The notes under the pieces are model-generated. The model worked only from the letters and a program-made list of their open reading frames with translations. It was not told where the DNA came from and searched no databases. 64,000 nucleotides of DNA. Origin: Octopus sinensis (Eukaryota). This document shows positions 2,401 through 29,451 of the stretch, in pieces. The DNA lies in assembly GCF_006345805.1 (NCBI RefSeq), contig NC_043002.1, positions 77,996,001 through 78,060,000 of the forward strand, read 5' to 3'. Positions within the stretch are counted from its first letter, which is position 1, and each line of letters opens with the position of its first letter. Position numbers and translations under genes: made by a program.

Positions 2401-4411
2401 TTATTGTGTGAAAAGGGGGCAGGGAACCATATCACATCATATTTCATGCTAATTGATCCATTTGTGGATTAATCACGTGGAACTGTGGTGGTTTACTCAT
2501 GATCCCTAACTTAATATCTTGTAATTGAGGTTTCATTGACAACATCAGGTTCATTGACAACAGAGTAGATTTACTGAAGACATCCCTGTCCTCCCTTTTG
2601 ATATTTTTGAGCCACTGCTAATTACATGTGTTATGTGTTATGTATCATAAAAGAGTGAAATAATCGATGTTTACAGTTGCATCATTGGAGTTTATGGGTT
2701 TCAGCATCTCATTCACTAGGTATTTCATAACTCTCTCCTTTTCTTGGATTATATATCCACAAATGTTATCCAAGCAACGTTTATGGAAAGTATTGTCTAT
2801 AAGAAATCCAAGTTTTGGTTTTGTAAAGCAAGATAGAAAGGATTACAGCTGAATACACGTCAATTTTGTTGAATAACTTCCATTTGCTTAAAGTTTTATG
2901 GTTAGATCAAAGGCTTACCTACAAGGTATTTGTCAAACCGATGTTACAGAAAATAACATGGCGGCTGTGAAGCAGGTTCAAATCTAGAACACTGTAGCTC
3001 TGTAGCAAACTACTTGACTACACAACCTTATTGGTTTGTGATTTGATTGATCACCTCTAGATTACCACTTATATATATAGTTATCACAAAGGCTGTCTTC
3101 CTCTAGTTTCAAAATATATTACAGCAAATGAAATAAGTAACACTTAGAGCTAGTTAATTTCTTGCAATATACTATGGTTTTGGCAGGATTTAATTCAGAC
3201 AGGTGAGTTTAACAAGATAGCTTCATGATAGCTTTTTGTTGGGAAATAAGGAGATAATTTTTGTAACATTGTATCAAGAGATTGCCTGATGTTTAACTCT
3301 TAAATAGCAGGAAAGGGTTGCATGAATGTATCTGCTAAATGAGCAAATGATATTTAACTCTCTTAGATTATATAGATAAAGACAAAAAAGGCAATAAAAT
3401 CGTTTGAGCATGAATTCATTTAAGATACCCACATTGTGTTGTCAAAACAATGGAGAAATGGAGAAAAATTGGTGCACTTTTTCATTCAAAGTTAATTGAA
3501 GCATCACTTCCTCCTGTGCTCTTTAGAGCATCATCATCATCATCATCATCATCTACTTCATCTGATTATAAAGGAAAATCAGAAAGACCTTCTTCACCAC
3601 TGTATAAATTTTCCATTTGTGACTTGGCTTCCCCCATTGACAAGGGTAACTTATGCTTAGGTGCATTTGATGAAGGAGACACTTAGGCATTAATGGATGA
3701 TGGCTCTATCCATGTAAATTTCTTGCAACATCAATTGATGACGTCTGCTATAAAATATATTCAAGCTACAGTTTATGGGAATTCAGAGTAATACTGTCAT
3801 TACAGTATGAAAGGATCTTATGTACAAGAATGACTTAGTTTTACAACTGTATATACCTTCTCAATGTCTGGTGACATGAGTCAGGGATTGAAGGGGAACT
3901 TCCTGACTTAACATAACTGAAACCATCTTATTAGATGAAGTGTAGGCGTTCAACAGTTGTGTGTACAAACATCTCATCACTCTCACACTCAACAATGCAA
4001 CAATTGGCTCATTGGACATTGTTTGGACTTTTATATGTCCAGCTAGGCTATTGGTCATGAGTATATGTACAATATTCATTTGCATATAAGATGCACTTTT
4101 TTTTCATGTAAAACATGATTATGTGATTTCCACATTGCTGGCACTACATCGTATGTATTTATATGTATTACACTGATAAAGTTCAAAATTTACTTTTGAA
4201 TTTGCTTTGTTGCACTAGTATGCAACTGCACATTATTTGAGAACCACAGATATAAGATTTCACTCTGGTACTCAGCTTGGTGCATGCTTACTTATAGCAG
4301 GAATAGTTGTAAGCTAATGAAAGTGTTTATGTAACTCCTGTTCTTTTATCATTCTTTACTAATTGATGTTACACTCTGTACTTAGCTGATGCTTTACTGT
4401 AAAGTATTAAG

Positions 4412-6830: not shown

Positions 6831-6856
6831 GGCATGCGCAAAGTGCTACTTCCTTT
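6831..6856 (+). promoter_or_regulatory. RPL14 core promoter: NRF1-like GGCATGCGCA plus 5'TOP/TCT-like CTTCCTTT
   Basis: GGCATGCGCA at 6831-6840 and CTTCCTTT at 6849-6856, just upstream of the ATG. TOP/TCT initiators are typical of RP genes. The TSS is inferred. Confidence 0.6.
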
Positions 6857-6874
6857 ACGCGCTGCGGTAACGCC

Positions 6875-6877
6875 ATG
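6875..6877 (+). CDS. RPL14: 60S ribosomal protein L14 (eL14), coding exon 1 (ATG only)
   Basis: CGCC-ATG directly followed by donor GTAAGT, downstream of a pyrimidine tract. An ATG-only first coding exon fits RPL14 gene structure and joins in frame to exon 2. Confidence 0.9.
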
Positions 6878-7998: not shown

Positions 7999-8103
7999 GT
8001 GTTCAATCGGAAATTCGTGGAGGTGGGTCGTGTGGCCTACATCGTGAAAGGCGTAGATTCTGGGAAATTGTGCGTCATTATCGACGTTATTGACCAAAAC
8101 AGA
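7999..8103 (+). CDS. RPL14: RPL14 coding exon 2
   Basis: ctatag|GTG...AGA|gtaagt; translates [35 protein letters not shown], matching the eL14 N-terminus (F-VEVGRVAY...DVIDQNR). Confidence 0.97.
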
Positions 8104-8208
8104 GTAAGTTAAAGTTTTTCTGAAGTACATTCAAGGTTTTGTAAAATACTATGTTGTAATGTTCTTTTTGTAGTCTGAAAATTGGTTTTCGTGCAGTTTC
8201 AAAATTAT

Positions 8209-8275
8209 TGAACATGATGTTAAAATACGGAAGTGGTCTGATTGATAAGGAAGACAATTTTCTTTACTGATATCA
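8209..8275 (+). ncRNA. Box C/D snoRNA candidate, family B copy 1 (RPL14 intron 2)
   Basis: C-like ATGATGT (8214), guide AAATACGGAAGTGGT, D' CTGA (8238), D CTGA (8267-8270), imperfect terminal stem; sense-strand intronic position in an RP gene. Confidence 0.7.
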
Positions 8276-9803
8276 TTAGTTTTGAAACTGAATGCTACAA
8301 AATATAGCAAATTATCTGATAGTTTAATGTAGTTTATCGGTATATTAGCGCTAAAACTCAAAAGATAATGTTTTCACAGTAGCGTGTTTTATACAGTAAT
8401 AATTTATATATACTGGTTTGTTTCTTATATTCATTTAAGAAACCATGACATTTTGTAGATATGAAACCGCGAACTGAGTAAAACACAGGTGAAAGGATAA
8501 ACGTGTAAAATGCGTTTGATTTATTATTTTCAATTAGTAAACTGGAATACAATTTATGCAAGATATTAATAATATCTAATGCATTTTTACACATATAATC
8601 TTTGCTTTCGGAGAAAAAACATTAAAACCGTGTTACATATGTTTATTGATGTATCTTTGCTTACAGAGTGCTCCATTTCAATCGATTGCATAGATAATCT
8701 TCGAAATAATTAGAAAATTGCAGTAATACTATTATATATTTTTTTACGAAATAACATGTAACTACGTGAACGTTTGTTTTATATATGCTTTGTAGTTGGA
8801 TGTCCTTCCTCTCGCTAACCCTAACATGCTTTTCAAGGGATTTATCATTCCATTTGTGTTTCAAAGCACAGCTAGTGAACGGTTTGTTGACAGTGAATTG
8901 TCAGCAGACGAAACTGCAGCGCAGCACTTTTCACACGAGACATATCGACATGTATAACTATATTTCATATTATTTGTCCAAATAAAGCTATCTATGATAA
9001 TTTCATTACAATCCTGTGTAATTATATTTTGGTTTACTAACTAAAATAATAGATCAAAATAGTTTCACAATTATTTAGCCACGAAAAAGCAAAGAACAGA
9101 CAGTTTTCTGCACATATTGATGCAACAATCGAGTACTTCCTCAAACTAGTTTTGTTGTATAAGTAAAATTATCATAAGTTACATTGTAGCAGCATATGTA
9201 CTTTCATTTAGATTTTTCAATGTTTTTTTTTTTTTTTTTTTACTTTTTCACTCAGATAGTAAAAGCCATATTATATTACTGGTTTCAGTCATTTGGCTGC
9301 AGAGATGCTGAGACACCCATTTGAAGAGTTTTGGTCATATTGATACCCTACTTACAATTCAGTCTAATATTTTATCAGTTAACAAGATTATGTTTTGATA
9401 GAGTATTCACAGAGACAACACAGACCTTTGAATATTTTGTGTATATCCTTAATATTTGTCAAGTTTAAGTACTATCCTAATATATGCTTGGCATCTTAGG
9501 TAGTTGTCTTCCATTATATCCTTGGGTTAAATATATTGTGAATGAGATTTGATGGAGAAAGAAAATCTATCAGACTTGTGTGTGCCTGTGTTTTTTTATA
9601 TGTCCTTTGACTTAGTGGCTTAACAAAAAGTGATTGATAAAATACCAGACTGCAATAAATACTGGGGTTGATATGATTGACTAGAACTGTTGAAGGTGGT
9701 GTCCCAGTATGACTGCAGTCTAAGGATTGAAGCTAGTAAAAGAATGTCAAAAGAAAACTTCTTTTTTTTAATTTTCTATCTAACCATGTTTTCATAATTA
9801 TAG

Positions 9804-9998
9804 GCTTTGATTGATGGACCATGCAGTGGTGTCTTAAGAAAAGCTATCAATTTCAATAGTGTGCATCTGACAAGATTTGTCATCAAGATCAGACACTCTG
9901 CAAGAACCATTGAAGTGAAAAGAGCTTGGGATACTGCTGACATAACTGGTAAATGGTCTCAGACGAAATGGGCTCAAAAGATTATGGCAAGACAAAAG
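9804..9998 (+). CDS. RPL14: RPL14 coding exon 3
   Basis: tag|GCT...AAG|gtttgt; translates ALIDGPCSGVLRKAINFNSVHLTRFVIKIRHSARTIEVKRAWDTADITGKWSQTKWAQKIMARQK. Confidence 0.97.
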
Positions 9999-11487
9999 GT
10001 TTGTTTTTATATATTGTGAATTCATTGCATTCAGAACAGATAAACAAGAAGTGTTCTCTGGTATTCCATTCTTGGGATCCTTTAGATTTTAGTGGGTTAG
10101 CATTATAGAACCAGAAGTGACCAAGGAATGAGTTGGTGTTAAAAAGATCAATCCACAGAATTCAATCTTTCTGGAAGTATGTTCATTATAAATTTTCTTC
10201 AAAATGTTGAAATGATGCTTTGTTTTTCTGTGTAATAAAAGTAGGTAATTCTGTACAAGTAGAGGATCAAAGTGTTTATAGTCATTTTATTTCCAGTTAT
10301 AAACCTCCATTCCCAAAACTATATAGGCAATGGTGATTGTATATATACGACATCTGATTAAATTGAATCTAGTAAATGCTTCAGTGTTTATTTCAGTGAG
10401 GCAAAGGCATCAAATGGTTTGCAATAAGACGTGGATTTAATGTGTTTAGATGGAACATGCTATGATAATTTCTGAAAACTAGTCAAGCTGATTGATATGG
10501 AATGAAATAGCTAAAGCAGTATAGACATGCAGATTAGTGGTGCATGCTGAGGAAAGTCTAGAAAATACTTAGATGTGATGAAAGTGGTGAGGTTTATCCA
10601 AATTGGGTTATAAGATATCTATGTTTTGCATGCATGATGACTGGGTTTAGATGATAGTGCCAACCATATGAATATTTTTTTTTGTCTCTGAAATCTAGTC
10701 TTATGCTTTGAAATTAGCAATACAAAAATGCTTCACTTTACAAGGACTTGATTTACGAGTTCTACTTTTCAAGCACAAGATTTAAATTTCGAATGAAGTG
10801 CAACAGTTTCTACTATCATAACAAATCCTTCTGTGTGTTACTGAGAAATTTATAGTGAAAAAAGTCTCAGCAAACAACTCTAGACTTATTTTTTAAAAAG
10901 AAATCCACAAGTCCATCTACAAGTGTTTGTGAATCAGCAATCATGTGTGCGAGTCAAATGCGACTGGAAGTTATTCAGAAAATAATTATAATAATTTTAA
11001 AATTTTTTTATGAATGATCTTGTTATTCCCTTTACATAGAATATTCTTTACATTCTACTGTTTTATTGCCATTTATTTATGAGTATTATAAATTTTATAG
11101 GTAAAATATTTTGTTTTGGAAACAAACGACGATTTATAACTTTGCTACTATGGGAAATTATTTCTATGCTTTATGAATGGTCTCTGGGAATAAAGTAACT
11201 CTTATATAGAGGCATTACTGTAGAAACTCGTGTATAAATAGGGAAATAAGTATCAAAAACTGAATGCACGTGTGTAATGAAGTCAGTATTTTTCTAAGTT
11301 AATACAACAATTCAAATGCATTCAACAATTCAAGACAGAGAAAGACAATAGGAGACGCATTGCTTTAATATGTATGGATTATCTTAACATTTTATTATAG
11401 TAAAAACCTACAAATATTTTTGTTTACATTGTTATTTGGCTTAAATATAATTTCCTGTAATCTAAGTCTTCATTGTTTCAAAATTAT

Positions 11488-11555
11488 TGAACATGATGTT
11501 AAAAATACGGAAGTGGTCTGATTGATAAGGAAGACAATTTTTTTTACTGATATCA
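11488..11555 (+). ncRNA. Box C/D snoRNA candidate, family B copy 2
   Basis: ATGATGT(11493)-TAAAAATACGGAAGTGGT-CTGA...CTGA(11547-11550). Confidence 0.7.
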
Positions 11556-11954
11556 TTAATTTTGATACTGAAGACTAGAAATATCTGATAAGTAATTTTA
11601 AGGGTATAATAATTGGCACAAACAATGGGAGAAATGTCAATGAAAAAGATTTTGCATCTTAGGTATTGATGATTATAAAAAATATTTTAAAGATAAGTAG
11701 TGGGTATATCTACAAGGAAGACATTTTTTCATGAAACATAAGTGTCAATTTGAAACATACTTAGTCTAATAATCACCATCAGAAACGTATAATTTGGTGG
11801 GTGTTTTATGCCATTTAGCGAATTAATATGTAACTTGTACATTACTGACTAAATTTCATAGTAATTTAAACTAATTTTGGTTACAATTTTGCAAAGTGTT
11901 AACAAAGGTAGTTATCATAAAAACAAAACAGATTTTTACACAAGTAATCAGTAA

Positions 11955-12090
11955 ATCTAGTGTTAGGCGTTGAAATTCCATTTTTGGCCTATAACTCCCA
12001 CCCTGTGTTAGTTTCCAGATATTTAGAAAAGAATGGAATAGGAGACAGAACTACATGGTTATGAAACATAATCTGTTAGCTACACATGCA
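11955..12090 (+). ncRNA. Possible H/ACA snoRNA-like element (repeated at ~13168, ~14314; diverged at ~15396)
   Basis: Two hairpin-forming segments (gttaggc/gcctataac; acaga/tctgt with ttatg/cataa), candidate H box AGAAAA or ACAGAA, and ACA near the end. The fold was done by eye only. Confidence 0.3.
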
Positions 12091-12122
12091 TCAATTAATT
12101 ATACACAAACACAAACCCAATT

Positions 12123-12187
12123 AGAACATGATGAGAAATGGAAGTGCCGTCTGAACCCTCAGGAAGATGCTTTCAAATCTGAGTCTA
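12123..12187 (+). ncRNA. Box C/D snoRNA candidate, family A copy 1 (RPL14 intron 3)
   Basis: C box ATGATGA (12128), guide AAATGGAAGTGCCGT, D' CTGA (12151), D CTGA (12179-12182), ttaga/tcta terminal pairing. Confidence 0.78.
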
Positions 12188-12311
12188 TAAGGGCATATAT
12201 TGTTAATAGCTTGAAGAGGATTAAATAAAAACTACTTATAGTGTTTTGGTGGGTTAAAAAAAAATAAAAATGTTAATTTTTATTGCTATAACAACAAAAA
12301 TATTAATAATA

Positions 12312-12475
12312 TTGCACAGATTTGTGGATGTTTGAGGTACTCATTATGAAGATGGTTTTATTGGTCTCCTCCTTGTAGTTCCTGGCTTTAGTTGGTACCA
12401 ATCTGTTCAGCTTTGATATTGAAATGTTAGATTAGTTGAGACATGATGCTCCAGTAATATCTGCTACACATTGTA
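12312..12475 (+). ncRNA. Possible H/ACA snoRNA-like element (copies ~13533 internally deleted, ~14677, diverged ~16280)
   Basis: cagatt/aatctg and gatatt/aatatc stems followed by ctACAcatt; retained in a diverged older copy; no clear H box. Confidence 0.25.
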
Positions 12476-12711
12476 AAGCCTATGTATTATTGTTGTTGGG
12501 TAAAATTTCTGACAGTCCGGCGCATGCAAGTTGCTGATGGTCATACAATAATTAATGAATGAAAAAGATAATAGCACTCTCATTGCTATAATATGTATGG
12601 ATTAGCATAGAATGTTACGGTAAAAACCTACAAATAATTTTGTTTACATTGTTATATGGCTTAACTATGATTTCTTGTAATTTAAAAGTGTCTTCAAAGT
12701 TTCAAAGTTAT

Positions 12712-12779
12712 TGAACATGATGTTAAAAATACGGAAGTGGTCTGATTGATAAGGAAGACAATTTTTTTTACTGATATCA
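12712..12779 (+). ncRNA. Box C/D snoRNA candidate, family B copy 3
   Basis: Same boxes and guide; C at 12717, D at 12771-12774. Confidence 0.68.
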
Positions 12780-13339
12780 TTAATTTTGATACTGAAGACT
12801 AGAAATATCTGTAATTTTAAGGGTATAATAATTGGCACAAACAATGGGAGAAATGTCAATGAAAAAGATTTTGCATCTTAGGTATTGATGATTATAAAAA
12901 ATATTTTAAAGATAAGTAGTGGGTATATCTACAATAAGACATTTTTTCATGAAACATAAGTGTCAATTTGAAACATACTTAGTCTAATAATCACCATCAG
13001 AAACGTATAATTTGGTGGGTGTTTTATGCCATTTAGCGAATTAATATGTAACTTGTACATTTACTGACTAAATTTCCCAGTAATTTAAACTAATTGTGGT
13101 TACAATTTTGCAATGTGTTAACAAAGGTAGTTATCATTAAAACAACAGATTTTTACACAAGTAATCAGTAAATCTAGTGTTAGGCGTTGAAATTCCATTT
13201 TTGGCCTATAACTCCCACCCTGTGTTAGTTTCCAGATATTTAGAAAAGAATGGAATAGGAGACAGAACTACATGGTTATGAAACATAATCTGTTAGCTAC
13301 ACATGCATCAATTAATTATGCACAAACACAAACCCAATT

Positions 13340-13404
13340 AGAGCGTGATGAGAAATGGAAGTGCCGTCTGAACTCTCAGGAAGATGCTTTCAAATCTGAG
13401 TCTA
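13340..13404 (+). ncRNA. Box C/D snoRNA candidate, family A copy 2
   Basis: C box GTGATGA (13345), same guide and D', D at 13396-13399. Confidence 0.78.
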
Positions 13405-13887
13405 TAAGGGCATATATGGTTTATAGCTTGAAGCGGATTAAATAAAAACTACTTTTAGTGTTTTGGTGGTTTTTTTAAAAAATAAAGATGTTAATTTTTA
13501 TTGCTATAACAACAAAAATATTAATAATATAGCACAGATTTGTGGATGTTTGAGGTACTCATTATGAAGATGGTTTTATTGGTCTCCTCCTTGATTGAAA
13601 TGTTAGATTAGTTGAGACATGATGCTCCAGTAATATCTGCTACACATTGTAAAGCCTATGTATTATTGTTGTTGGGTAAAATTTCTGACAATCCGGCGCA
13701 TGCAAGTTGCTGATGGTCATACAATAATTAATGAATGAAAAAGACAATAGCACTCTCATTGCTATAATATGTATGGATTAGCATAGAATGTTACGGTAAA
13801 AACCTACAAATAATTTTGTTTACATTGTTATATGGCTTAACTATGATTTCTTGTAATTTAAAAGTGTCTTCAAAGTTTCAAAGTTAT

Positions 13888-13956
13888 TGAACATGATGTT
13901 AAAAATACGGAAGTGGTCTGATTGATAAGGAAGACAATTTTTTTTTACTGATATCA
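13888..13956 (+). ncRNA. Box C/D snoRNA candidate, family B copy 4
   Basis: Same boxes and guide; C at 13893, D at 13948-13951. Confidence 0.68.
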
Positions 13957-14484
13957 TTAATTTTGATACTGAAGACTAGATATAACTGTAATTTTAAGGG
14001 TATAATAATTGGCACAAACAATGGGAGAAATGTCAATGAAAAAGATTTTGCATTAAGATAAGTAGTGGGTATATCTACAAGGAAGAATTTTTTTCATGAA
14101 ACAAGTGTCAATTTGAAACATTCTTAGTCTAATAATCATCATCAGAAACGTATAATTTGGTGGGTGTTTTATGCCATTTAGCGAATTAATATGTAACTTG
14201 TACATTTACTGACTAAATTTCCCAGTAATTTAAACTAATTTTGGTTACAATTTTGCAAAGTGTTAACAAAGGTAGTTATCATTAAAACAACAGATTTTTA
14301 CACAAGTAATCAGTAAATCTAGTGTTAGGCGTTGAAATTCCATTTTTGGCCTATAACTCCCACCCTGTGTTAGTTTCCAGATATTTAGAAAAGAATGGAA
14401 TAGGAGACAGAACTACATGGTTATGAAACATAATCTGTTAGCTACACATGCATCAATTAATTATACACAAACACAAACCCAATT

Positions 14485-14549
14485 AGAACATGATGAGAAA
14501 TGGAAGTGCCGTCTGAACCCTCAGGAAGATGCTTTCAAATCTGAGTCTA
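14485..14549 (+). ncRNA. Box C/D snoRNA candidate, family A copy 3
   Basis: C box ATGATGA (14490), same guide, D at 14541-14544. Confidence 0.78.
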
Positions 14550-15074
14550 TAAGGGCATATATGGTTAATAGCTTGAAGAGGATTAAATAAAAACTACTTA
14601 TAGTGTTTTGGTGGGTTAAAAAAAAATTAAAATGTTAATTTTTATTGCTATAACAACAAAAAATTAATAATATTGCACAGATTTGTGGATGTTTGAGGTA
14701 CTCATTATGAAGATGGTTTCATTGGTCTCCTCCTTGTGTAGTTCCTGGCTTTAGTTGGTACCAATCTGTTCAGCTTTGATATTGAAATGTTAGATTAGTT
14801 GAGACATGATGCTCCAGTAATATCTGCTACACATTGTAAAGCCTATGTATTATTGTTGTTGGGTAAAATTTCTGACAGTCCGGCGCATGCAAGTTGCTGA
14901 TGGTCATACAATAATTAATGAATGAAAAAGACAATAGCACTCTCATTGCTATAATATGTATTGATAAGCATAGAATGTTATGGTAAAAACCTACAAATAA
15001 TTTTGTTTACATTGTTATATGGCTTACCTATGATTTCTTGTAATTTAAAAGTGTCTTCAATGTTTCGAAGTTAT

Positions 15075-15142
15075 TGAACATGATGTTAAAAATACGGAAG
15101 TGGTCTGATTGATAAGGAAGACAATTTTTTTTACTGATATCA
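15075..15142 (+). ncRNA. Box C/D snoRNA candidate, family B copy 5
   Basis: Same boxes and guide; C at 15080, D at 15134-15137. Confidence 0.68.
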
Positions 15143-15553
15143 TTAATTTTGACATTGAAGACTAGAAATATCTGATAAGTAATTTTAAGCGTATAATAAT
15201 TGGCACAAATTACCGTCAGAAAGCTATTTCATGTCATCTAGCGAATTAATATGTAATTTTTACATTTACTGACTAAATTTCACAGTAATTTAAACCAATT
15301 TTTTAGAAATTAGTTAAAATTTTGCAGTGTTAACAAATGTACTTTCATTAAATTAACTAGTGAGTCTAGAGTTTTCTCCCTTCTGCAGCGATTTAAATCT
15401 AGTGTTGGGCATACATTTTTGGTTTATCAACATATAATGCCAACTCTGTATTAGCTTCAAGATATTTAGAAAGGATTGGAAGACAGCTACATGGTTACAA
15501 AACAATCTGTGGACATTTGACCATGCCTACATCAATTACACACAAACCCAATT

Positions 15554-15620
15554 AGAACGTGATGAGAAATGGAAGTGCCGTCTGAATTCATAAGAAGACA
15601 AATCTTCATCTCTGAGTGTC
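15554..15620 (+). ncRNA. Box C/D snoRNA candidate, family A copy 4
   Basis: GTGATGA (15559), guide, D', D (15612-15615); 8-bp terminal stem CAATTAGA (15549-15556) / TCTAATTG (15619-15626). Confidence 0.82.
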
Positions 15621-16127
15621 TAATTGATGTATACAAAGAAAAAATTTTGCTACCTGTATATGTCCAGTGGGGTGGGTGGTACCTAGCTATTTTAGAATTG
15701 TTTGTCAAGCCCATTATCAATCTGTTTTTTTCTTTCTGATAGATAGCTAAATATCAGGGGAAAGGTAAGGTGGTAGTGATCGGGATTCCAGAGCAAATTC
15801 AACAAATAGATATAGATTGCAGATCAGGAGCAGGGTGATTAAATATGGGTGGGAATGAAGGGTACAAAAGTGAAGGTTTGGTTTGAAGGAATATATCTGG
15901 GTGGCAAAGATTATGAGCAAGGCATATGAACAGTGTAGAGGATGAGGAATTACATTAGAGATGAAGTAAAATGAGACGAAATCACTGTGTTGTAATTGGT
16001 AGTTAGCATTTACTTGCATGACTTCACAGTTGCTTGAGAGCTATTTGGTCAGTTCTTAAAGGCTTATGGTTATTTGATATTAATTATGCTCCCTGCATTT
16101 ATGTGTGTAGCATAAATAAATTTCATT

Positions 16128-16192
16128 AGAACATGATGAGACATGGAAGTGCCGTCTGAATTCTCAGGAAGACGCTTTCAAATCTGAGTCTA
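16128..16192 (+). ncRNA. Box C/D snoRNA candidate, family A copy 5
   Basis: ATGATGA (16133), ACATGGAAGTGCCGT-CTGA, D at 16184-16187; flanks diverged from the other copies. Confidence 0.78.
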
Positions 16193-16993
16193 TACTCTTA
16201 GCATTTTGGTATTTTGTTTTTATTTTTATAGCTTTGACTTGATTACTGTTGTTGACAACGAAAATGTAACTAAGTAATTGCACAGATTTGTAAGTGGTGT
16301 ACTTATTATGAAGTTAGTTTTATTTGTTTCTTCCTTGTAGTTCTTGGCTTTAGCTGGTACCAATCGGTTCAGCTTTGATATTGAAATATATTAGATTGAG
16401 ACATGAAACTTCAGTAATATCTGGTACACATTATTGTTGGGTAAAACTTTGCATTGTCAATGAAAGTATGGATCCTGTTATTCTGTTAGAAACTAGATTA
16501 CTTTTGTCTATATGGTATGTTTAACAAAAAAAAAAAAAAAGATTTAAAAAGCCAGTACGTACACTTACCTCATGAATGAAATAATGTTGCTAGAGTTTCT
16601 ACACTATCATTTTTACAATTTTCTCCCCTTCCTAGTTGAATCTTCAAAAATTTTCAAATTTTAATTTGGGCATTTTCAGTATTGGAAAGGACAATGTTCT
16701 TGGTTCTTCCCTTGTATCAGTTTGTATTTCCTTCATTTCTAATTAATACTTCAATACTCTTGCACTATAAGTATTACATTCCATCCTTTCTTGATCTCCA
16801 TTGCTTCATAATTACTATCAAAGCTTTCCTTATAGTAATTTAGTGTTAAACTTTAGAACATGAAATATGAAGCACATGAACGTCTGTAATTTTGCACCTA
16901 ATGTTTACAGAGAACTGCTGGCATGTGTAGTGAAATGGAAGTGATTCTGTTAAAAATATTTTGAATATTTTGTAATATGATTTAAAACTAATT

Positions 16994-17059
16994 AGAACGT
17001 GATGAAATTTGGAAGTGCCGTCTGAACCAGTGTGATGACGATCTTCAAACCTGAGTAAT
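16994..17059 (+). ncRNA. Box C/D snoRNA candidate, family A copy 6 (all four boxes canonical)
   Basis: C GTGATGA (16999), guide TTTGGAAGTGCCGT, D' CTGA, C' GTGATGA, D CTGA (17051-17054); perfect 10-bp terminal stem ACTAATTAGA (16987-16996) / TCTAATTAGT (17059-17068). Confidence 0.88.
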
Positions 17060-17716
17060 CTAATTAGTGAAGTCATATTCATTTGAAATATCTTTAATGG
17101 AGTGTGAAATACTGATAATCTTGAAATTACAGGTTTTGAAATTCCGGCTCCTTTATATGGGGTTTGTGTCTACAAATAAGGGTGGCGCAAAACAGATACT
17201 GTCTTGAAATTGTGCATTTTTTCAGAAATGATCCTCAGTGATGTCAATCAGCATTTGGATATGAGGCTTTTTGAAAATCATGTTGATGTAACATTGGTTT
17301 TTATCCCTCTCTCTATAAACAAAGTTTTTGCTAGGATGCATTTAGTCTTCTATCTTTCAAATTGGCCAGTGTTTTAATTTTTCTTTAACCCTTTCATTAC
17401 TGTATTTATTTTGAGATGCTCTGTGTTTCTTTCAATTTTAAATATAAGAAAGAATTTAGCAAAATAACTTAGTTGTTATTAAGCTAGTGTTAGGAACATA
17501 AATTGTGACTAAGGTTTGGTGGAAGATTTTAATTCTAAATTTAGGAAACAAGACATTTGTACTACATAGCCAGAGCTGGTTTCAGCTGGGTTGGTAATGA
17601 AAGGGTTAATCATTAGTTATATATGATACATGGTTATTAAGTCATTTAGAAATCTGGTAATTTCCATATGAAGAAGTGAAGTGTAAGGTCATGTCCTTTT
17701 TTTTTTCTCTTTGTAG

Positions 17717-17770
17717 CGAGCAATGATGACAGATTTTGATCGATTCAAGCTGATGCGGGCTAAGCAGGCG
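17717..17770 (+). CDS. RPL14: RPL14 coding exon 4
   Basis: ttgtag|CGA...GCG|gtaaga; translates RAMMTDFDRFKLMRAKQA, containing the conserved MTDFDRFK motif. Confidence 0.97.
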
Positions 17771-17946
17771 GTAAGATAATTATTTTATACATTTCTTTCT
17801 CTAGTTAGGGCCATGGGCCAAATGTTAGTGCTTCAAATTTCTCATATTTCACTGTTTTGCTTTTTTAGAATAAATACTATGTATTTTAATATTTGTCAAA
17901 TTTATTCCATTTAATTAATGGAAAAAAATTTTTTTTCTTTTTTCAG

Positions 17947-18051
17947 AGAAATAGAATTGTTACTCAAGAATTTAAAAAGCTTAAAAAGAAGCAGAAGGTT
18001 GATAGAAAACTCAAACTCAAATCGAAGCCCAAGACAGTTGTAAAGCAATAA
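17947..18051 (+). CDS. RPL14: RPL14 coding exon 5 (to stop)
   Basis: tttcag|AGA...CAA TAA; translates RNRIVTQEFKKLKKKQKVDRKLKLKSKPKTVVKQ*. The spliced product is 153 aa. Confidence 0.93.
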   Translation, partial: RNRIVTQEFKKLKKKQKVDRKLKLKSKPKTVVKQ

Positions 18052-18052
18052 A
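18047..18052 (+). terminator. RPL14 polyadenylation signal AATAAA overlapping the stop codon
   Basis: cAATAAAg spans the last codon and TAA; a T/GT-rich tract follows. Confidence 0.6.
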
Positions 18053-18639
18053 GTTATATATGTAATAAGTTGCTATGAATACTTCTGGTGTTTTTCTTCT
18101 TTTTTTCTTCTTACGAAATCTAACAAACTGCAGTGATAGTGGAGATACAAGTGAACTAGATATTTTTGTGATATTGTAGTTTCTTATCTGAAAGCCATAT
18201 GAATTGTTGTGTTGTTAAGAAACCTGTGGGTGGGTGGTGGAGGCTCCTTGTCTTGATGTCACATGACGGTTGTCCATGTCTAACACTTCAATTTAAGTGA
18301 TGTTCCTTTCTGATCGTCTGTAATAAACAGGTCTGGCGATGGGGAAATACTACTTTAAAGACAGGTGCGATTTGCTGTCAAGGATGGCAATCTGACTATA
18401 GAAGACCTACCTCGAATTCTTTCTAACCCATGTCAACATAAGAGTTTAAAACTCTGGTTTCTATGTATACGACAACTGTGTCTGATGTTACAGAATCCTT
18501 CATATTGTATTAGTATTACAAGAGAATCGGCTTCATGGCCTTTGTAGACCTTCCCAGATTGATGTGGTTGATATTCTGTTTAAACATTTGTAGTTCAAAG
18601 TTGAAGTAATTTCGGGTTTGTACACTTAGAAGAAAAGTA

Positions 18640-18952
18640 TGAAAAACGACTGGTGGGCTTGTAAGTTTGTCCTCATCTTTGTTATTAACACAATGTTTCG
18701 GCTGATATATCCTTCAGCCTTTTTCAGGTGTCTTGGGGAAATTTCGAACTTGGGTTCCCATTCCCAAGTTATTTTTCGATATTATTATTGTTATTGTTCA
18801 GGTCACTGCTTAGAATAGAATTCAGAATCTTGGGGTTAGCCTGCGCTTTTAACTACTACACCATATGCCGTGTGTTAACAGCAAAGAAGATGAGGACAAA
18901 TATCTACCAAATGTACATAATTCCTCATCTCTTAAATATAGAAATGTTGATA
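18640..18952. mobile_element. Second tRNA-derived element family: minus copy plus inverted tail fragment
   Basis: Homologous to 54335-54880; head on the minus strand ends ~18870, then the plus-oriented tail GATGAGGACAAATAT...CTCATCTCTTAAATATAG. Confidence 0.75.
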
Positions 18953-19689
18953 TTTTGTCTTACTATTTGAGCAAAGCAGTTCTGGTATTGATTTCATGAC
19001 TGAAAAATCTATGCTTCTGAAGACCTATGGAATATGATTATCTCTTACCAGAAAATCAGGTTTAAGTTTGGAAGGAAGGGCAGCATGCCTCAATCACTTC
19101 CTGTTCAATACATGCTGGCATGGAAAAACAGACATGAAGGGAGGAGTAAAAATTTCATGTGACAGTAGTCATCTGGTAAGCTTGTAAGCCAAGTATGGCA
19201 TGATTATGAAGTTTCTTCTACATCCCTTTGGTTCTGTCTGGTGCTTTGTTTCACAGCCTTAGGGGTTGAACAATAAATACCTTGTGATTAGGATTTGGTA
19301 GGCCTGTTGTATGCGTGTATATATGTATGCTTGTATGTTTTGCTGGAAACTGTCTAGATGATATTTGAAGAAAAAATATCTTGTATGATATTTGTTCTGT
19401 ACAAGTTGCACAGAAAATCCTCTGTCAGAAATGGAGGTTAAACTTGTTGAAAACATCCATTAATGCTATGGAGTATCAAATGTGATAAAATATACTATAA
19501 GAAAATTTCACTTTTGGCTTGAATGAAAAAAATTTGATATATTGTCACAAAAAAATCTACTTTGGCTTTAACTGTTGGTCAGCTTGATCCTCACTTGAAA
19601 TACACTGTTTCAATTAATTTTGGAAATCATGAATTTGGTAAGAATATTTTGATAGATTAATATAGATCATTTTAAAACATGAAATTCAC

Positions 19690-22600
19690 ACCATACATAC
19701 AGGATTGTCATTTATATGAGGATGGGCTGTAAAGTTCATGGGTTGACTGAAGGAGTGCCGGAAGATGTGGCAGATCTGCAGGCATTCATTGGAAACACAG
19801 CTAGGGATCTCAGCTGTGTCCCTCCAAAAAGTGCTTCCCGACTTGGCCGACCGGGATCCAAACCCAGGCTGTTGTTTACGGGCTCTACTGAGGCGCGGAC
19901 ATTCCATCTGGCTGCTGACAGAGCTCGGCATGACAACATTATCAACTTTAGAACACGTCCTGGCCTACCACCCGATGTACGCCCAAAGATAAGATCCGTG
20001 GCTTCCCTAAATCGCAACTCTGTGCCACGGGAGAGTTTTAGCCTCCGCGATGATGGGCAGATCTGGAAATTTGTCAAGTCTGGTGAGTCGTGGATAAGGG
20101 ATGCCAGTTGGACTGAGCAGGCTACACCCACAACAACTGGCAATGCAAAAATCTTGGGAAACTAACCAAGAACAATCAGCCATCCCCTGTATATCATCAT
20201 CTGAAATCCAGATATAAACTGCTGTCCTTGAATGCCCGTAGTTTATGTAACAAGGTGCATCTTTTTGTCTCCTACGTCAAAAGTATCAACCCAGATTTCA
20301 TCACAGTCACGGAAACGTGGGCGCACTCTGTGATGGAGTTTTCAGCATAGCCGGCTACAACCTGTTCCACAAAGACCGCATTAATCGCCATGGAGGGGGT
20401 GTGATGATTTATGTTCGATCAAGTCTATCGGCAATCCCCTGTGATGATTTGAACCAATCTCAGTAGGAGGTATTTTTCTGCAATGTACACATGACCATGT
20501 CAACACTTCTGCTCGGAGTCGTTTACTGTCCTCCAAATTATCGGCAAGACGCACAGCTTTTTGATATCCTCAGGGCGGCTGCCATGAAAACAGCCACATG
20601 TGTATGTTGCGGGGCACTTCAATTTCCCTGAGATTGACTGGGAGGCCTTCCGTTGGCCGCAAAGTGCAGACGATTTCCTTGAACTGGTGCTGAATTCGAA
20701 TTGGTCCCAAGTTGTTACTTCCCCCACAAGGGGTAACAACACTTTGGATCTGCTACTTACCGCTTCTCCTGAAACAATCATTAGTGTCACTATCGAAGAA
20801 CCTTTGGGTGACTCTGATCATGGCCGACTTGTCTCTGATTGGTTGTAACAAAAAACACAACCATCTTCAGATTGCCCGCTTTGACTGGAATAAAGCAAAC
20901 TGGAGCTCTTATTGTACTGAGCTGCAACGCCCGAACTGGCGCGAATTTTATACCTCTGGAGATGTGGACACTATACTCCAGAACATTCTGAATTCAATAT
21001 GGGCAGCATGTGCAGCATCAGTACCACACAAGCACAAAAAAACCACCCAATAGTGCAATTTGGGAGACTGCAGCAGTCCGACTTGCCAGGAAAGAACGCC
21101 GTAATGCTGAATGGGAATACAAATTGCACAAATCAGAGAGCAACAGGAAAAAGCGCAATAGGTCAGCCAACCACCTCAAGCAGGTGACAAAAAAGGCAGT
21201 GCTTGAATTCGAACAACGCATTGCAGCTAACCCTGACAGCAAAGGGTTCTGGAAGCATGTGCACTCAAAGCAGAGACCCCACTCTCCTGTTGGTCCCCTT
21301 CGCAATCCCCACACAGGACAGATTACTGGCAATCCCAAAGAATGTGCAGAAATCATTGCTGGATGCTATGCCGGTATCTTTACTGTCGAAGACCAAAATG
21401 TTCCATCATCATCACCACTGACATCGGACTCTATATCTTCTATGCAATTTACACCAGCAATGCTGCAACGCCACCTAAAGAATAAACGCAATTATGCCTC
21501 TCCTGGTCTCGATGGTGTTACATACCTACTTCTCAAACGCGGTGGGTACTTTCTTCTAAGCCAACTTTCTCTATTCTTCCAATTCTGTCTTGACAATGGT
21601 GTTACTCCAGAACAGTGGAAAACTGCCAGTGTCATCCCTCTGTTCAAAAAGGCGACCGCACATCGCCTGTCAACTATCGCCCCATCAGTCTTACCAGCTG
21701 CATCGCCAAACTGATGGAATCCTGTATCAGAGAAACCTTCTGGAAGTCTCACAGCCTCATCCAGCCGTCACAATTCGGATTTATTCCTAACTCCAGCTGC
21801 TGTAATCAACTCATCGAGTTTCTTGAGGATGTTACCCAAATCACTGATCGCGGATCTTGGGTGGATGTTGTTTACCTGGACTTTGCTAAGGCTTTTAACT
21901 CTGTGCCACACAAAAGACTTATGGTGAAGCTTTCTGCGTTGGGTGTAAGAGACAAACTCTATAACTGGTTAAAGTCCTTTATTTTCGTCCGAAAAGAGGT
22001 TGTCACAGTTCTAGGACAGCACTCTTCGCCCTATGAGATGGCATCTGGTGTGCCGCAGGGATCTGTTCTTGGCCCCCTTTTATTTGTTGCATATGTTAAT
22101 GACATAGATGCCAACTTAAAGAATGCCACAGTGCTGAAATATGCAGATGACATCAAGCTGTACCTCGAAATAAAGAGGTCAAATCCTATACACTATGGAT
22201 CTCTATTGCAAGCAGACCTGGACACAATGCAGCAGTGGATCATGGACTGGCAACTCAAGCTGGCTGTGGAAAAATGTACCACCATACATTTTGGGAGGAG
22301 AAACCTAGCGTCCACCTACTCCCTCCACAACACTAGTTTCAAAAAGTCTTCAAGTGAACATGACCTGGGTGTTATTGTCGACAGTGATTTGCGTTGGACA
22401 AAACACATCGCCAAAATTGTTAAGAGGGCTGAGGGTGTCTTGGCATCACTCACCAAATCCTTTGTGAGCCGCTCTCCGGCTATCTATCTGCGGCTTTATA
22501 TAGCTATGGTAAGACCTCACCTGGAATTTGCATCACCGGTCAGGAACCCCTATCTTGCCCAGGACATCAATTGTCTGGAAGCTGTTCAGCGACGTGCAAC

Positions 22601-23090
22601 CAAAAGAATACCCTCCATCAGGCATTTGCCATATCCTGAACGCCTTACTTCCCTGGGCATGGACACATTGAAACTCCGACGTCTGGCAGCTGACCTGGCA
22701 GACACCCATAAAATTATCAACCATCGCACAAACAATAACACTGAGCACCTCTTCAAACTCCACCCATCTAACACCCGTGGACATATTTACAAAGTAAGAA
22801 AACAGCACAGCTCCCATGACTTCAGGAAACATTTTTTCACGCTGAGAGTTGCTGAAGCGTGGAACAAACTGCCGGCGTCAGTTGTTAGTTGTCGGAGCAC
22901 TGCATCCTTCAAGACTTCCATCCTTCCTGAGATTCGCCAACACTACACTTGATTTTCTCCCCTCCATACACACACAAGCATGTTCACTTTCCAGACATTT
23001 CTACATTACTGCATGTACTTTATATGCACTTTCTGACAAGTTGTGGTGCACCTGAGCACTGTATACAATAATTTCATTATTATTATTATA
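19690..23090 (+). mobile_element. Near full-length CR1-clade LINE: ORF1 remnant, APE endonuclease and RT, frameshifted
   Basis: ORF1-like 19716-20165; APE motifs NARSLCNK, TETW, GYNLFHKDR..GGGV, GHFN, TLDL, SDH; RT motifs DVVYLDFAKAFNSVPH, SGVPQGSVLGPLLF, YADDIKL (ORF 21615-22952); (ATT)n tail. Confidence 0.95.
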
Positions 23091-28130: not shown

Positions 28131-28213
28131 TTAAGCAATGGAACTAGCATTTGAAGCAATACGGGGCCATAAATCTGCACATTCTTTAGCAACTGGTCCT
28201 GTGATGGCTGATC
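28131..28213 (-). CDS. RPL23: RPL23 coding exon 5 (to stop)
   Basis: ttcag|GA...GCT TAA; translates [27 protein letters not shown]. Total CDS is 423 nt = 140 aa. Confidence 0.97.
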
Positions 28214-29337
28214 CTGAAAGAGAAGAAAAAAAAATTAACCTAAATAATTTATATATTACAAGTAACATAATCAAGCGATCGAGATGTCCTCAGCATCTTA
28301 GGCCAACCATTTATAGTCTCTCTGATATAATAAATGTGAGTGAGTGTCACACCTTTTCAACTTTACTCCTACAGGCTGTAGCCCAACACATCATATCACT
28401 TTGGATTCCCAAGTTCTTATTACTTTTATTTTTTGTGTACCATAATTTTTATAATTGAAAGGCCGACTCCATGAGTAAATTAAAAACATCCTGGGCCAAA
28501 TCTAGACCAGCTATCCTGAAAATTTGGATTCTCAAGCTTTTGTCAATGCGATTGTTTTTGGCGATATTTTTACATGATAATTTTTATAACCTGGAAATAA
28601 ATTTTGGGAATAACCGAAATTGCAACAAATTCTCCAAAACAATCCTAACCTAAAATAAGTCAAGGATCTGTTAGCAGATCTCATTTGGGGTCAGTATAGC
28701 TAGTTACAAATATTGGGACTAGTAAAATTGGTCATGATGTACCAGAATTAGCATTCTTGCCAGTAAGTTCTAAAGCTTACACTCTGAACCAGCTAATTTT
28801 GTTGAGGACATCAACTGAGAAACACCAATGAAATATTTAAACAAAACCACCAGCCTGATTTTACCAATATAATTACCTCCCTTATCATTAACACACAACC
28901 CCATGAACCACCTTCAGTGACTTAGGCAAAAACCTTAAGGCGCCTCATACCAAGAGGATAGAAATCCTTTCAAATAAAAATTTTTGCTAAGCCCGTGCTA
29001 CAAATTTTAGAGGCAGTCACCCATTCATAATTCAAGCAAAAAACCGCCACCAATCAAACGGTTGTCCAAACCAGTCTGTCAAGGCAGAGAGTGGGTCACT
29101 TTAGAACAGAACATAAGCAACAAGTAAACCAAACTTTCAAAAACACTTTACTCTTTTTTGAAAATCAAAGAGGGGTGGGGAAAAAAAAAAACCGCATTTA
29201 ATAACACTTCGTCTAACATACGAACCAATAGTATCAGGTGATCGAAGAAACATTTAAAGAAAGAAAATGTATATTAACACTTAATACAGTTAACAATACA
29301 AAATTCTAACAGACATATGAAGCAACAAGGAAGTTAC

Positions 29338-29451
29338 CTTTCATTTCCCCTTTATTGTTGACAATAACACCAGCATTGTCTTCAAAGTATATAAAAACAC
29401 CATCTTTTCTCCGTAGAGGTTTCCGTTGCCGAATCACCACCGCTGGCATTA
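29338..29451 (-). CDS. RPL23: RPL23 coding exon 4
   Basis: ccag|TA...AAAG|gtaact; translates [38 protein letters not shown]; 114 nt. Confidence 0.97.

What the first reader, a model, noticed from the sequence alone, without database searches (positions are those of the whole stretch)
12123..17068. Six-copy intronic box C/D snoRNA family (A) with an invariant guide and no obvious target
Seen: six units in RPL14 intron 3 keep a C box, the 12-nt TGGAAGTGCCGT and D' CTGA, while the D-side guide and flanks diverge in copies 4-6. Terminal stems are kept with different sequences (8 bp and 10 bp). This pattern points to selection on a D' guide. Established: C/D snoRNAs methylate the base paired to the 5th nt upstream of D', predicting target 5'-ACGG[Cm]ACUUCCA-3'. 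Inference: I cannot find this in the conserved 18S/28S/5.8S or spliceosomal snRNA sequences I recall, and I know of no snoRNA hosted in vertebrate RPL14. It may be a lineage-specific or orphan guide held at high copy number.
Basis: partly seen in the sequence, partly recalled or inferred. Interest (0 to 1): 0.75.

Follow-up and report, generated by a model that had tools for sequence, protein, structure and literature searches.

The report
Six U49 snoRNA copies in RPL14
The six small nucleolar RNA genes in an intron of the ribosomal-protein gene RPL14 are real, but their "orphan" guide is the ancient U49/SNORD49 guide, which directs methylation of a 28S rRNA cytidine beside the peptidyl-transferase centre, so this is an amplified member of a known family rather than a new kind of guide.

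Summary
Six box C/D units on the + strand (12119-17067) share C box, TGGAAGTGCCGT, D' CTGA and D box. They are the only such units in the 2.7-Gb genome. All lie in the 7.7-kb intron 3 of RPL14 (eL14).

The "no target / orphan / lineage-specific" reading does not hold. The guide core GGAAGUGCCGUC matches the Rfam consensus of SNORD49 (vertebrates), ceN22 (nematodes) and Plasmodium snoR28 exactly. All six copies hit SNORD49, though below its gathering score.

SNORD49 guides human 28S Cm4456. This genome's 28S carries that site (GUCGG[C]UCUUCC, 42 nt upstream of the A-loop U). The guide pairs with it through 4+5 Watson-Crick pairs and two U-U oppositions, and the Rfam consensus faces the same two. 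That is why a perfect-complement search fails.

In metagenome contigs of at least three other unidentified animals, the same snoRNA sits in the same RPL14 intron. Drosophila RpL14 is a reported snoRNA host, in a paper that cites a U49 study.

Copies A1-A3 are recent tandem duplicates (97-99% identical), so only A4-A6 bear on selection. Expression and methylation could not be tested.

Verdict: new member of a known kind; modest interest.

The parts
6853..6877 (+). RPL14 exon 1 (putative: CTTCCTTT TOP-like start; ends in ATG followed by GTAAGT)
   Evidence: Read from the sequence. Exon 2 begins right after a stop codon and an AG, so the ATG must come from an upstream exon.
7999..8103 (+). RPL14 exon 2 ([35 protein letters not shown])
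   Evidence: tblastn finds homologous exons in other contigs.
9804..9998 (+). RPL14 exon 3 (ALIDGPCSG...KIMARQK)
   Evidence: Pfam Ribosomal_L14e, 62 bits against a cut-off of 30.5. Splice sites read.
9999..17716 (+). RPL14 intron 3 (7.7 kb), host of A1-A6 and of four 'family B' snoRNA copies
   Evidence: GT at 9999 and AG at 17715-17716.
12119..12190 (+). U49-like snoRNA A1 (C box 12128-12134, guide 12139-12150, D' 12151-12154, D box 12179-12182)
   Evidence: Model R1 88.1 bits. SNORD49 20.3 bits.
13336..13407 (+). U49-like snoRNA A2 (guide 13356-13367)
   Evidence: SNORD49 18.4 bits.
14481..14552 (+). U49-like snoRNA A3 (guide 14501-14512); scores the same as A1
   Evidence: SNORD49 20.3 bits.
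15549..15626 (+). U49-like snoRNA A4 (guide 15570-15581); 8-bp terminal stem
   Evidence: SNORD49 26.5 bits, E=0.0086.
16124..16195 (+). U49-like snoRNA A5 (guide 16144-16155)
   Evidence: SNORD49 18.8 bits.
16989..17067 (+). U49-like snoRNA A6 (guide 17010-17021); canonical C' box TGATGA and a 9-bp terminal stem. It looks most like the homologues elsewhere.
   Evidence: SNORD49 23.8 bits and snoR28 29.1 bits.
11800..15220 (+). Three tandem units of ~1.15-1.22 kb, each carrying one A and one B snoRNA (97-99% identical)
   Evidence: the repeat finder families D1, D2 and D4, spacing 1217/1145.
16927..16963 (+). Decayed remnant of an A-type copy (GTGAAATGGAAGTGATTCTG)
   Evidence: Weak R1 match, 5.3 bits; sequence.
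17717..17770 (+). RPL14 exon 4 (RAMMTDFDRFKLMRAKQA)
   Evidence: tblastn homologues.
17947..18051 (+). RPL14 exon 5 (RNRIVTQEFKKLKKK... stop)

Best explanation
The six units are paralogous genes of the U49/SNORD49 box C/D snoRNA, carried in intron 3 of the ribosomal-protein gene RPL14.

Shown here:
- Each unit has the C, D' and D boxes and a terminal stem.
- The D' guide core GGAAGUGCCGU is the one shared by vertebrate SNORD49, nematode ceN22 and Plasmodium snoR28.
- This genome's 28S rRNA carries the SNORD49 target GUCGG[C]UCUUCC. Its C lies 42 nt upstream of the A-loop U, which corresponds to human Cm4456.
- The snoRNA occupies the same RPL14 intron in other animals.

Inferred:
- The units are transcribed as part of the RPL14 pre-mRNA.
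- They are freed from the spliced intron by debranching and exonucleolytic trimming. For an array this long, cleavage between units may also be needed.
- They are bound by Snu13, Nop56, Nop58 and fibrillarin.
- They pair with pre-28S rRNA through 4+5 Watson-Crick pairs interrupted by a U-U opposition. Fibrillarin then 2'-O-methylates the C paired to the fifth nucleotide upstream of D'.
- The D-side spacer has no rRNA match and is free to drift.

The array arose by tandem duplication. A1-A3 are very recent copies; A4, A5 and A6 are older.
For: - Six copies, far above chance. They are the only ones in the genome.
- Every copy hits Rfam RF00277 SNORD49 at 18.4-26.5 bits (best E=0.0086). A4 and A6 also hit RF01604 snoR28. 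GGAAGUGCCGUC is identical to both consensus lines.
- The ceN22 consensus has the same UAGGAAGUGCCGUCU.
- SNORD49A/B is assigned to 28S Cm4456, old numbering Cm4426 (PMC9941101). The chicken U49 homologue targets a 28S C 80 nt before the U35 site (PMC2653536). U49/AtU49 Cm4426/Cm2869 appears in a table of ancient snoRNAs (PMC3511168).
- The 28S motif GATGTCGGCTCTTCCTATCATTG occurs 36 times exactly in this genome. The paired C is 42 nt upstream of the A-loop U.
- Predicted duplex energy is -15.7 kcal/mol with a 1x1 U-U loop.
- Synteny: tblastn with this gene's exons places a U49-type snoRNA between the exon 3 and exon 4 homologues of RPL14 in L040, L063, L079, L083, L096 and L101 (one group) and in L051. 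In L091 and L111 it lies just downstream of exon 3 and the contig ends there.
- Homologues keep terminal-stem complementarity with unrelated sequences. Cognate stems average 6.8 bp against 3.3 bp for non-cognate arm pairs.
- Several of these homologues pass the SNORD49 gathering score.
Against: - None of the six reaches the SNORD49 gathering score of 37 bits.
- In this genome the pairing to the canonical site is short: 9 Watson-Crick pairs plus two U-U oppositions. The 5' extension AUA of vertebrates is missing.
- That site is not the most stable match in the rRNA. 46 overlapping windows score better. On complementarity alone the site would not be predicted, so the assignment rests on homology.
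- C' boxes are degenerate in A1-A5.
- A1-A3 and A5 have only 4-bp terminal stems, and every unit lies at least 650 nt from the 3' splice site.
- The invariance of the guide among the metagenome homologues follows from the search pattern. Only the Rfam consensus lines and the L111 intron-2 copy are free of that bias.
Confidence: 0.8

Rival explanations
1. Orphan or lineage-specific guide. The invariant D' guide would target an unknown, non-rRNA or species-specific RNA with the perfect complement ACGGCACUUCCA, and would be kept at high copy number for that purpose.
For: No perfect 12-nt complement exists in the 18S, 5.8S or 28S pieces examined. No Rfam family reaches its gathering score.
Against: The guide is identical to those of SNORD49, ceN22 and snoR28, which span vertebrates, nematodes and apicomplexans. 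The same snoRNA in the same RPL14 intron occurs in other animals. The 117 genomic matches to the 12-mer are fewer than the roughly 320 I estimate for a random 12-mer in 2.7 Gb read on both strands (my estimate; one search gives the count).
Confidence: 0.03
2. Retargeted or dual-target guide. In this lineage the shortened guide also, or instead, pairs with ACGG[C]GCUUC in the D2 expansion segment of 28S and directs a lineage-specific methylation there.
For: The match is ten contiguous pairs (9 Watson-Crick plus 1 G-U) starting at position 1 from D'. Predicted energy is -18.1 to -19.4 kcal/mol, better than -15.7 for the canonical site. At least 19 rDNA copies carry the site, 11 of them matching the 23-nt pattern exactly. 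One copy reads ACGGCACUUC, fully Watson-Crick.
Against: A match this good arises for 49 of 200 shuffled guides against the same rRNA, so it is at chance level. The site lies in a variable expansion segment, and the C27 copy reads ACGGCGCTCTGA. Nothing is known about it in relatives.
Confidence: 0.12
3. Mostly dead copies. Only one or two units (A6, perhaps A4) would make a stable snoRNA. A1-A3 and A5 would be young duplicates that are not, or only poorly, processed. The 'six-copy family held at high copy number' would then be a by-product of tandem duplication, not of selection. This reading is compatible with the best explanation.
For: A1-A3 are 97-99% identical tandem duplicates. A1-A3 and A5 have 4-bp stems and degenerate C' boxes, whereas A6 has a canonical TGATGA C' box and a 9-bp stem. 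A decayed remnant at 16927-16963 shows that copies do die here.
Against: All six keep intact C, D' and D boxes and the guide. A5 is old enough to have diverged flanks yet keeps its 5' half. Terminal stems of 4-5 bp are usual for intronic C/D snoRNAs (general knowledge).
Confidence: 0.3

Closest known systems
SNORD49A/B (U49; Rfam RF00277, clan CL00062), vertebrates
   Same: Box C/D architecture. The D' guide core GGAAGUGCCGUC is identical. The same 28S target site (human Cm4456, old numbering Cm4426). The same two U-U oppositions to the target. Intronic location.
   Different: The vertebrate guide extends by AUA, giving three more base pairs. The host is a non-coding gene that, from my own knowledge, it shares with SNORD65; the vertebrate-like contigs L039 and L062 show SNORD49 next to SNORD65. 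There are one or two copies rather than six. The copies here score 18-26 bits, below the 37-bit gathering score.
Drosophila U49 snoRNA genes in RpL14 (Enerly et al. 2003, Hereditas 138:73; not readable here)
   Same: The host gene is RpL14, and there is more than one intronic copy. PMC4028297 reports 'two intronic snoRNAs' in RpL14 and cites the U49 paper.
   Different: Two copies against six, plus five B-type paralogues here. I could not read the paper or the fly sequence. That the two fly snoRNAs are U49 rests on my own recollection of the FlyBase names and on the citation.
ceN22 (RF01622, nematodes) and Plasmodium snoR28 (RF01604)
   Same: The consensus guide (U)AGGAAGUGCCGUC is followed by a D'-like box.
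   Different: Different flanks, spacers and D' variants (CUUAGA, CCGA). Their hosts were not examined.
U49-type snoRNAs in RPL14 introns of unidentified animals (metagenome contigs L040/L063/L079/L083/L091/L096/L101, L051, L111)
   Same: The same intron (between the Ribosomal_L14e exon and the MTDFDRFK exon), the same guide, D' CTGA or CAGA, and a C' box about 10 nt after D'. L051 also has three units in that intron.
   Different: Terminal stems have unrelated sequences (GTGTCAGT/ACTGACAC, GCACC/GGTGC). The L040-L101 group has one copy in this intron. Guide identity in this set follows from the search pattern.
Intronic snoRNA clusters of Drosophila and plants
   Same: Several snoRNAs share one intron, so they cannot all follow the vertebrate 'one snoRNA per intron, about 70 nt from the branch point' rule (general knowledge).
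   Different: Here the cluster is a tandem amplification of two related guides inside a ribosomal-protein gene.

Membership tests
Box C/D snoRNA (general class) | C box RUGAUGA near the 5' end, D box CUGA near the 3' end, with flanking complementary arms | tested here: met
   All six have A/GTGATGA and CTGA. Arms are 4 bp (A1-3, A5), 8 bp (A4) and 9 bp (A6).
Box C/D snoRNA (general class) | Internal D' (and C') box with a guide immediately upstream of D' | tested here: met
   D' CTGA directly follows the 12-mer in all six. C' is canonical only in A6 (TGATGA) and degenerate in A1-A5.
Box C/D snoRNA (general class) | Accumulates as a stable ~60-100-nt RNA bound by fibrillarin, Nop56, Nop58 and Snu13 | not testable with these tools
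U49 / SNORD49 (RF00277, CL00062) | D' guide sequence of the family | tested here: met
   GGAAGUGCCGUC is identical to the RF00277 consensus. It is also identical to RF01604 and RF01622.
U49 / SNORD49 (RF00277, CL00062) | Complementarity to 28S placing the Cm4456-equivalent C opposite the 5th nt upstream of D' | tested here: met
   The target GUCGG[C]UCUUCC is present. Its C is 42 nt upstream of the A-loop U. Pairing is 4 bp, U-U, 5 bp, the same mismatch pattern as the consensus guide against this site. It is shorter than in vertebrates and not the top thermodynamic site.
U49 / SNORD49 (RF00277, CL00062) | Score at or above Rfam's gathering threshold (37 bits) | tested here: not met
   The six score 18.4-26.5 bits. 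This threshold is Rfam's operational cut-off, not a biological feature, and from the rest of its consensus I take the model to be tuned to vertebrates. Homologues with the same guide straddle it: L061 scores 44.1, L100 scores 38.0 and 37.2, the L111 intron-2 copy 39.8, the L111 intron-3 copy 26.6 and L083 24.5. I therefore file these as U49 orthologues by guide, target and host synteny, not as certified RF00277 hits.
U49 / SNORD49 (RF00277, CL00062) | The target C is actually 2'-O-methylated, and the methylation depends on the snoRNA | not testable with these tools
   Needs RiboMeth-seq and a knock-down.
RPL14-hosted U49 (protostome arrangement) | Located on the sense strand in the RPL14 intron after the Ribosomal_L14e exon | tested here: met
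   Exon map. The same position is found in contigs of at least three other lineages.

The most novel reading that the evidence does not exclude
An ancient U49-RPL14 intron-3 linkage was amplified in this lineage into an array of about 11 intronic snoRNA genes. Within it, a duplicated U49 copy gained a new specificity. Family B differs from A in the guide mainly by loss of 'CC' (GGAAGUGCCGU becomes GGAAGUGGU) and now has a 12-bp match to a different 28S site, GCCA[C]UUCCGUA. The shortened A guide may in addition have picked up a lineage-specific site in the D2 expansion segment. If so, this would be a clean natural example of how tandem duplication inside one intron creates new rRNA-methylation guides from an old one.
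Probability: 0.25. Interest if true: 0.45.

Novelty: new member of a known kind. Interest (0 to 1): 0.25.

Why it matters
The finding removes a false 'orphan guide' lead. The guide has a known, deeply conserved target next to the peptidyl-transferase centre.

Three points are of modest value:
- Annotation. Rfam at its gathering thresholds misses all six copies, so genome annotations of this animal probably lack its only U49 genes.
- Evolution. The snoRNA sits in the same RPL14 intron in several animal lineages, while vertebrates use another host. The octopus-type locus shows tandem amplification and a probable derived paralogue with a new 28S target.
- Mechanism. Both U-U oppositions, one directly 3' of the methylated C, are kept in every U49-type consensus seen here. 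A perfect-complement target search will therefore always miss this family.

Tried and rejected
- Perfect complement. ACGGCACTTCCA gives 117 genomic matches, six of which are the snoRNAs themselves. None falls in the rRNA pieces examined, and the count is below the roughly 320 I estimate by chance.
- Rfam at gathering thresholds over the whole window: nothing.
- D-side guides of all six copies against 18S, 5.8S and 28S: no convincing site, best scores 7.6 or less.
- D2 expansion-segment site ACGGCGCUUC: better on paper than the canonical site but at chance level, 49 of 200 shuffles. Kept as a low-probability rival.
- The first 28S copy fetched (L015, contig C27) is interrupted after GGGAGTAACTAT by a stretch whose translation resembles a reverse transcriptase, and it lacks the 3' half. 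I replaced it with L016/L024 and L026.
- The genome search with RF02543 failed with a machine error. That pattern then found 36 exact matches.
- Tandem Repeats Finder found nothing because the period exceeds 500. The repeat finder found the 1.2-kb units.
RPL14 relatives from the search of protein representatives could therefore not be traced to genomic loci.
- The search of earlier findings returned nothing.
- The Enerly 2003 and Huang 2005 papers are not held.
- Human-related caution. Contigs L047 and L095 come from human-gut metagenomes and could be human DNA. I left them out of every script and comparison.
- L036, L039 and L062 look like non-human vertebrates: SNORD49 next to SNORD65, with sequence differing from the Rfam consensus. 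They were only scanned with Rfam and printed once, and were not pursued.
- The spliced RPL14 model was never joined. Exons were searched one by one, by reference.
- The MAFFT alignment of homologues (A3) does not keep the terminal stems in register. I compared stems with a script instead.

Full report
OBSERVATION

The 12-mer TGGAAGTGCCGT occurs six times in the window, all on the + strand, at 12139, 13356, 14501, 15570, 16144 and 17010. Chance expectation is 0.07.

Alignments of the six units show a common plan:
- 5' arm ATTAGA(A/G)C
- C box A/GTGATGA
- four nucleotides
- the 12-mer
- D' box CTGA
- a 24-26-nt spacer
- D box CTGA
- a 3' arm containing TCTA

The 5' half is almost invariant. The spacer and outer flanks differ in A4, A5 and A6.

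Two refinements are needed. First, A1-A3 sit in a 1.15-1.22-kb unit repeated three times at 97-99% identity. Their identity says nothing about selection, so only A4-A6 do. Second, the terminal stems share one core (TAGA/TCTA). It is 8 bp in A4, 9 bp in A6 and only 4 bp in A1-A3 and A5. A4 and A6 differ by a single compensatory pair.

A decayed seventh copy lies at 16927-16963.

Genome-wide, a covariance model of the six (R1) and a C-box + guide + D' pattern find only these six. The genome is 2.72 Gb in 13,516 contigs.

HOST GENE

Exon 3 (9804-9998) scores 62 bits on Pfam Ribosomal_L14e. The remaining exons can be read directly:
- Exon 1 ends in ATG|GTAAGT at 6877.
- Exon 2 is 7999-8103.
- Exon 4 is 17717-17770 (RAMMTDFDRFKLMRAKQA).
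- Exon 5 is 17947-18051.

The exons were searched one at a time by reference. The joined protein was never built.

IDENTITY

No Rfam family reaches its gathering score in the window. A permissive scan of 9000-20000 does match every one of the six to RF00277 SNORD49, at 18.4-26.5 bits with a best E of 0.0086. A4 and A6 also match RF01604 Plasmodium snoR28.

The printed consensus lines show why. SNORD49 reads AUAGGAAGUGCCGUCAGA and snoR28 reads AGGAAGUGCCGUCCGA. The units here read AUGGAAGUGCCGUCUGA. The nematode family ceN22 has UAGGAAGUGCCGUCU. The guide is therefore not lineage-specific. It is shared by vertebrates, nematodes, apicomplexans and this animal.

TARGET

SNORD49A/B is assigned to human 28S Cm4456, Cm4426 in the old numbering (PMC9941101). 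The chicken homologue targets a 28S C 80 nt before the U35 site (PMC2653536). That spacing matches human 4456 and 4536, the latter being Cm4506 in the old numbering plus the same 30-nt offset. U49/AtU49 Cm4426/Cm2869 is listed among ancient guides (PMC3511168).

The conserved 28S motif GATGTCGGCTCTTCCTATCATTG is present 36 times exactly in this genome. In the 28S 3' part L024 (Rfam LSU), the C of TCGG[C]TC is 42 nt upstream of the U of the A-loop TTGTTCACCC. From my own knowledge, that A-loop U is human Um4498, and 4498-42 = 4456.

The pairing, counted from D', runs as follows:
- position 1: U opposite U
- positions 2-5: Watson-Crick pairs, with position 5 opposite the target C
- position 6: U opposite U
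- positions 7-11: Watson-Crick pairs

The same two U-U oppositions follow from the Rfam consensus guide against this universal site.

A weakness must be stated. Here the guide lacks the AUA extension of vertebrates, which leaves nine Watson-Crick pairs. Predicted duplex energy is -15.7 kcal/mol, and 46 overlapping rRNA windows score better. The assignment therefore rests on homology, not on complementarity alone.

COMPARATIVE EVIDENCE

A pattern scan of metagenome contigs (C box, 2-14 nt, GGAAGTGCCGTCNGA) returned 85 stretches. Many are GC-rich chance hits. About twenty are convincing C/D snoRNAs whose terminal stems have unrelated sequences but stay complementary. Cognate arms average 6.8 bp against 3.3 bp for non-cognate arm pairs. 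Several pass the SNORD49 gathering score.

tblastn with this gene's separate exons gives these positions:
- In L040, L063, L079, L083, L096 and L101 (one group) and in L051, the snoRNA lies between the homologues of RPL14 exon 3 and exon 4.
- In L091 and L111, it lies just downstream of exon 3 and the contig ends there.

This is the same intron as here. L051 has three units in that intron. L111 has a further SNORD49-like unit in intron 2 (39.8 bits), with guide AGGAAUUGCCGU.

Other contigs with the snoRNA (L100, L110 and others) show no RPL14 exon, so hosts differ between lineages.

The literature agrees. Drosophila RpL14 carries two intronic snoRNAs, and that paper cites Enerly et al. [quoted passage not shown] PMC2817437 cites the same work for host switching. 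I could not read Enerly et al. That the fly pair is U49 is my recollection plus the citation.

One caution applies. Guide identity within the metagenome set was imposed by my search pattern.

HOW IT MOST LIKELY WORKS

Shown: gene anatomy, guide identity, presence of the target, host intron, synteny.

Inferred from what is established for intronic box C/D snoRNAs:
- The units are transcribed with RPL14.
- They are released from the excised intron.
- They are protected by Snu13, Nop58, Nop56 and fibrillarin bound at the C/D and C'/D' motifs.
- They methylate the 28S C paired to the fifth nucleotide upstream of D'.

Ten snoRNA units share this intron, and every unit is at least 650 nt from the 3' splice site. 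Processing cannot follow the vertebrate branch-point-distance rule for all of them. The long external stems of A4 and A6 may compensate, and A6 also has the only canonical C' box. Which copies are productive is open.

RIVALS

(a) An orphan guide is essentially excluded.

(b) A site in the D2 expansion segment, ACGG[C]GCUUC, gives ten contiguous pairs and -18.1 kcal/mol. It is present in at least 19 rDNA copies. However, 49 of 200 shuffled guides do as well, and the segment varies between rDNA copies. I give it about 0.12.

(c) Some copies may be inert young duplicates. This is compatible with the main explanation.

NOT DONE

- Contigs L047 and L095, from human-gut metagenomes and possibly human, were left out of all analyses.

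VERDICT

The units are new, unannotated members of the known U49/SNORD49 kind, in an arrangement (RPL14 intron) found here in other invertebrate-like contigs and, by my reading of the literature, already known from flies. They are amplified here to six copies. Interest is modest.

Noticed in passing
window 8204-8275 (intron 2); 11488-11557, 12713-12782, 13889-13958, 15076-15145 (intron 3), + strand: A second box C/D family ('B'), with five copies that alternate with A1-A4. It is a paralogue of A. Model R1 hits it at E 1e-5 to 1e-4, and alignment A4 shows shared flanks, D', and the AGGAAGAC spacer. Its guide UACGGAAGUGGU differs from A mainly by loss of 'CC'. It has a 12-bp match (11 Watson-Crick plus 1 G-U) to 28S GCCA[C]UUCCGUA at L024:67-78, 441 nt upstream of the U49 site. 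From memory, this region corresponds to the yeast snR64 / human U74 site; I did not test that.
   Followed up: partly
window ~10566-10700, + strand (intron 3): A possible third C/D-like element. It has TAGAT-GTGATGA at its start, an internal ATGATGA, and CTGA-AATCTA at its end. There is no Rfam match at E<=10 and no target was sought.
   Followed up: no
window 28134-29491, - strand: Exons of RPL23 (uL14; Pfam Ribosomal_L14, 53.6 bits) lie about 10 kb downstream of RPL14 (eL14), on the opposite strand, so the two genes sit tail to tail.
   Followed up: partly
window 21615-22949, + strand: A 445-aa open reading frame with a reverse-transcriptase domain (RVT_1, 126 bits). It is probably a retrotransposon, lying between RPL14 and RPL23.
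   Followed up: partly
L015 (G000:C27:19899000-19908700), - strand: This 28S copy is interrupted after GGGAGTAACTAT by a stretch whose translation resembles a reverse transcriptase (reads ...YADDTKV...), and the 3' half of 28S is missing. A second copy (L016, contig C2) has a 5.6-kb gap between LSU model positions 1888 and 1891.
   Followed up: no
G000, many contigs: rDNA pieces are scattered over most chromosomes-sized contigs. There are 40 5.8S hits and 73 matches (up to 2 mismatches) to the peptidyl-transferase-centre motif. Most 18S copies span about 2.6 kb, but one on contig C1618 spans 1667 nt and has the best score. That one might be a different rDNA type or foreign DNA.
   Followed up: no
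L051:3260-3330 and 3680-3750, + strand: In another animal's RPL14 intron 3, two extra U49-type units carry the guide but have an aberrant C box (ATGTGAA). Amplification inside this intron therefore also happened elsewhere.
   Followed up: partly
L111:1455-1523, - strand: A SNORD49-like snoRNA (39.8 bits, above the gathering score) lies in intron 2 of that organism's RPL14. Its guide is altered to AGGAAUUGCCGU. In position it parallels family B copy B0 in intron 2 here.
   Followed up: partly
L039, L062 (metagenome contigs MDSQ01...): These are vertebrate-like contigs with SNORD49 next to SNORD65 and snoR38. From memory, SNORD49 beside SNORD65 is the arrangement of the vertebrate non-coding host. 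I judged them non-human by sequence and did not pursue them.
   Followed up: no
window 17719-17768, + strand: The weak Rfam 'sR14' hit here is RPL14 exon 4. Its GCAATGATGAC reading frame mimics a C box, so it is not a snoRNA.
   Followed up: yes
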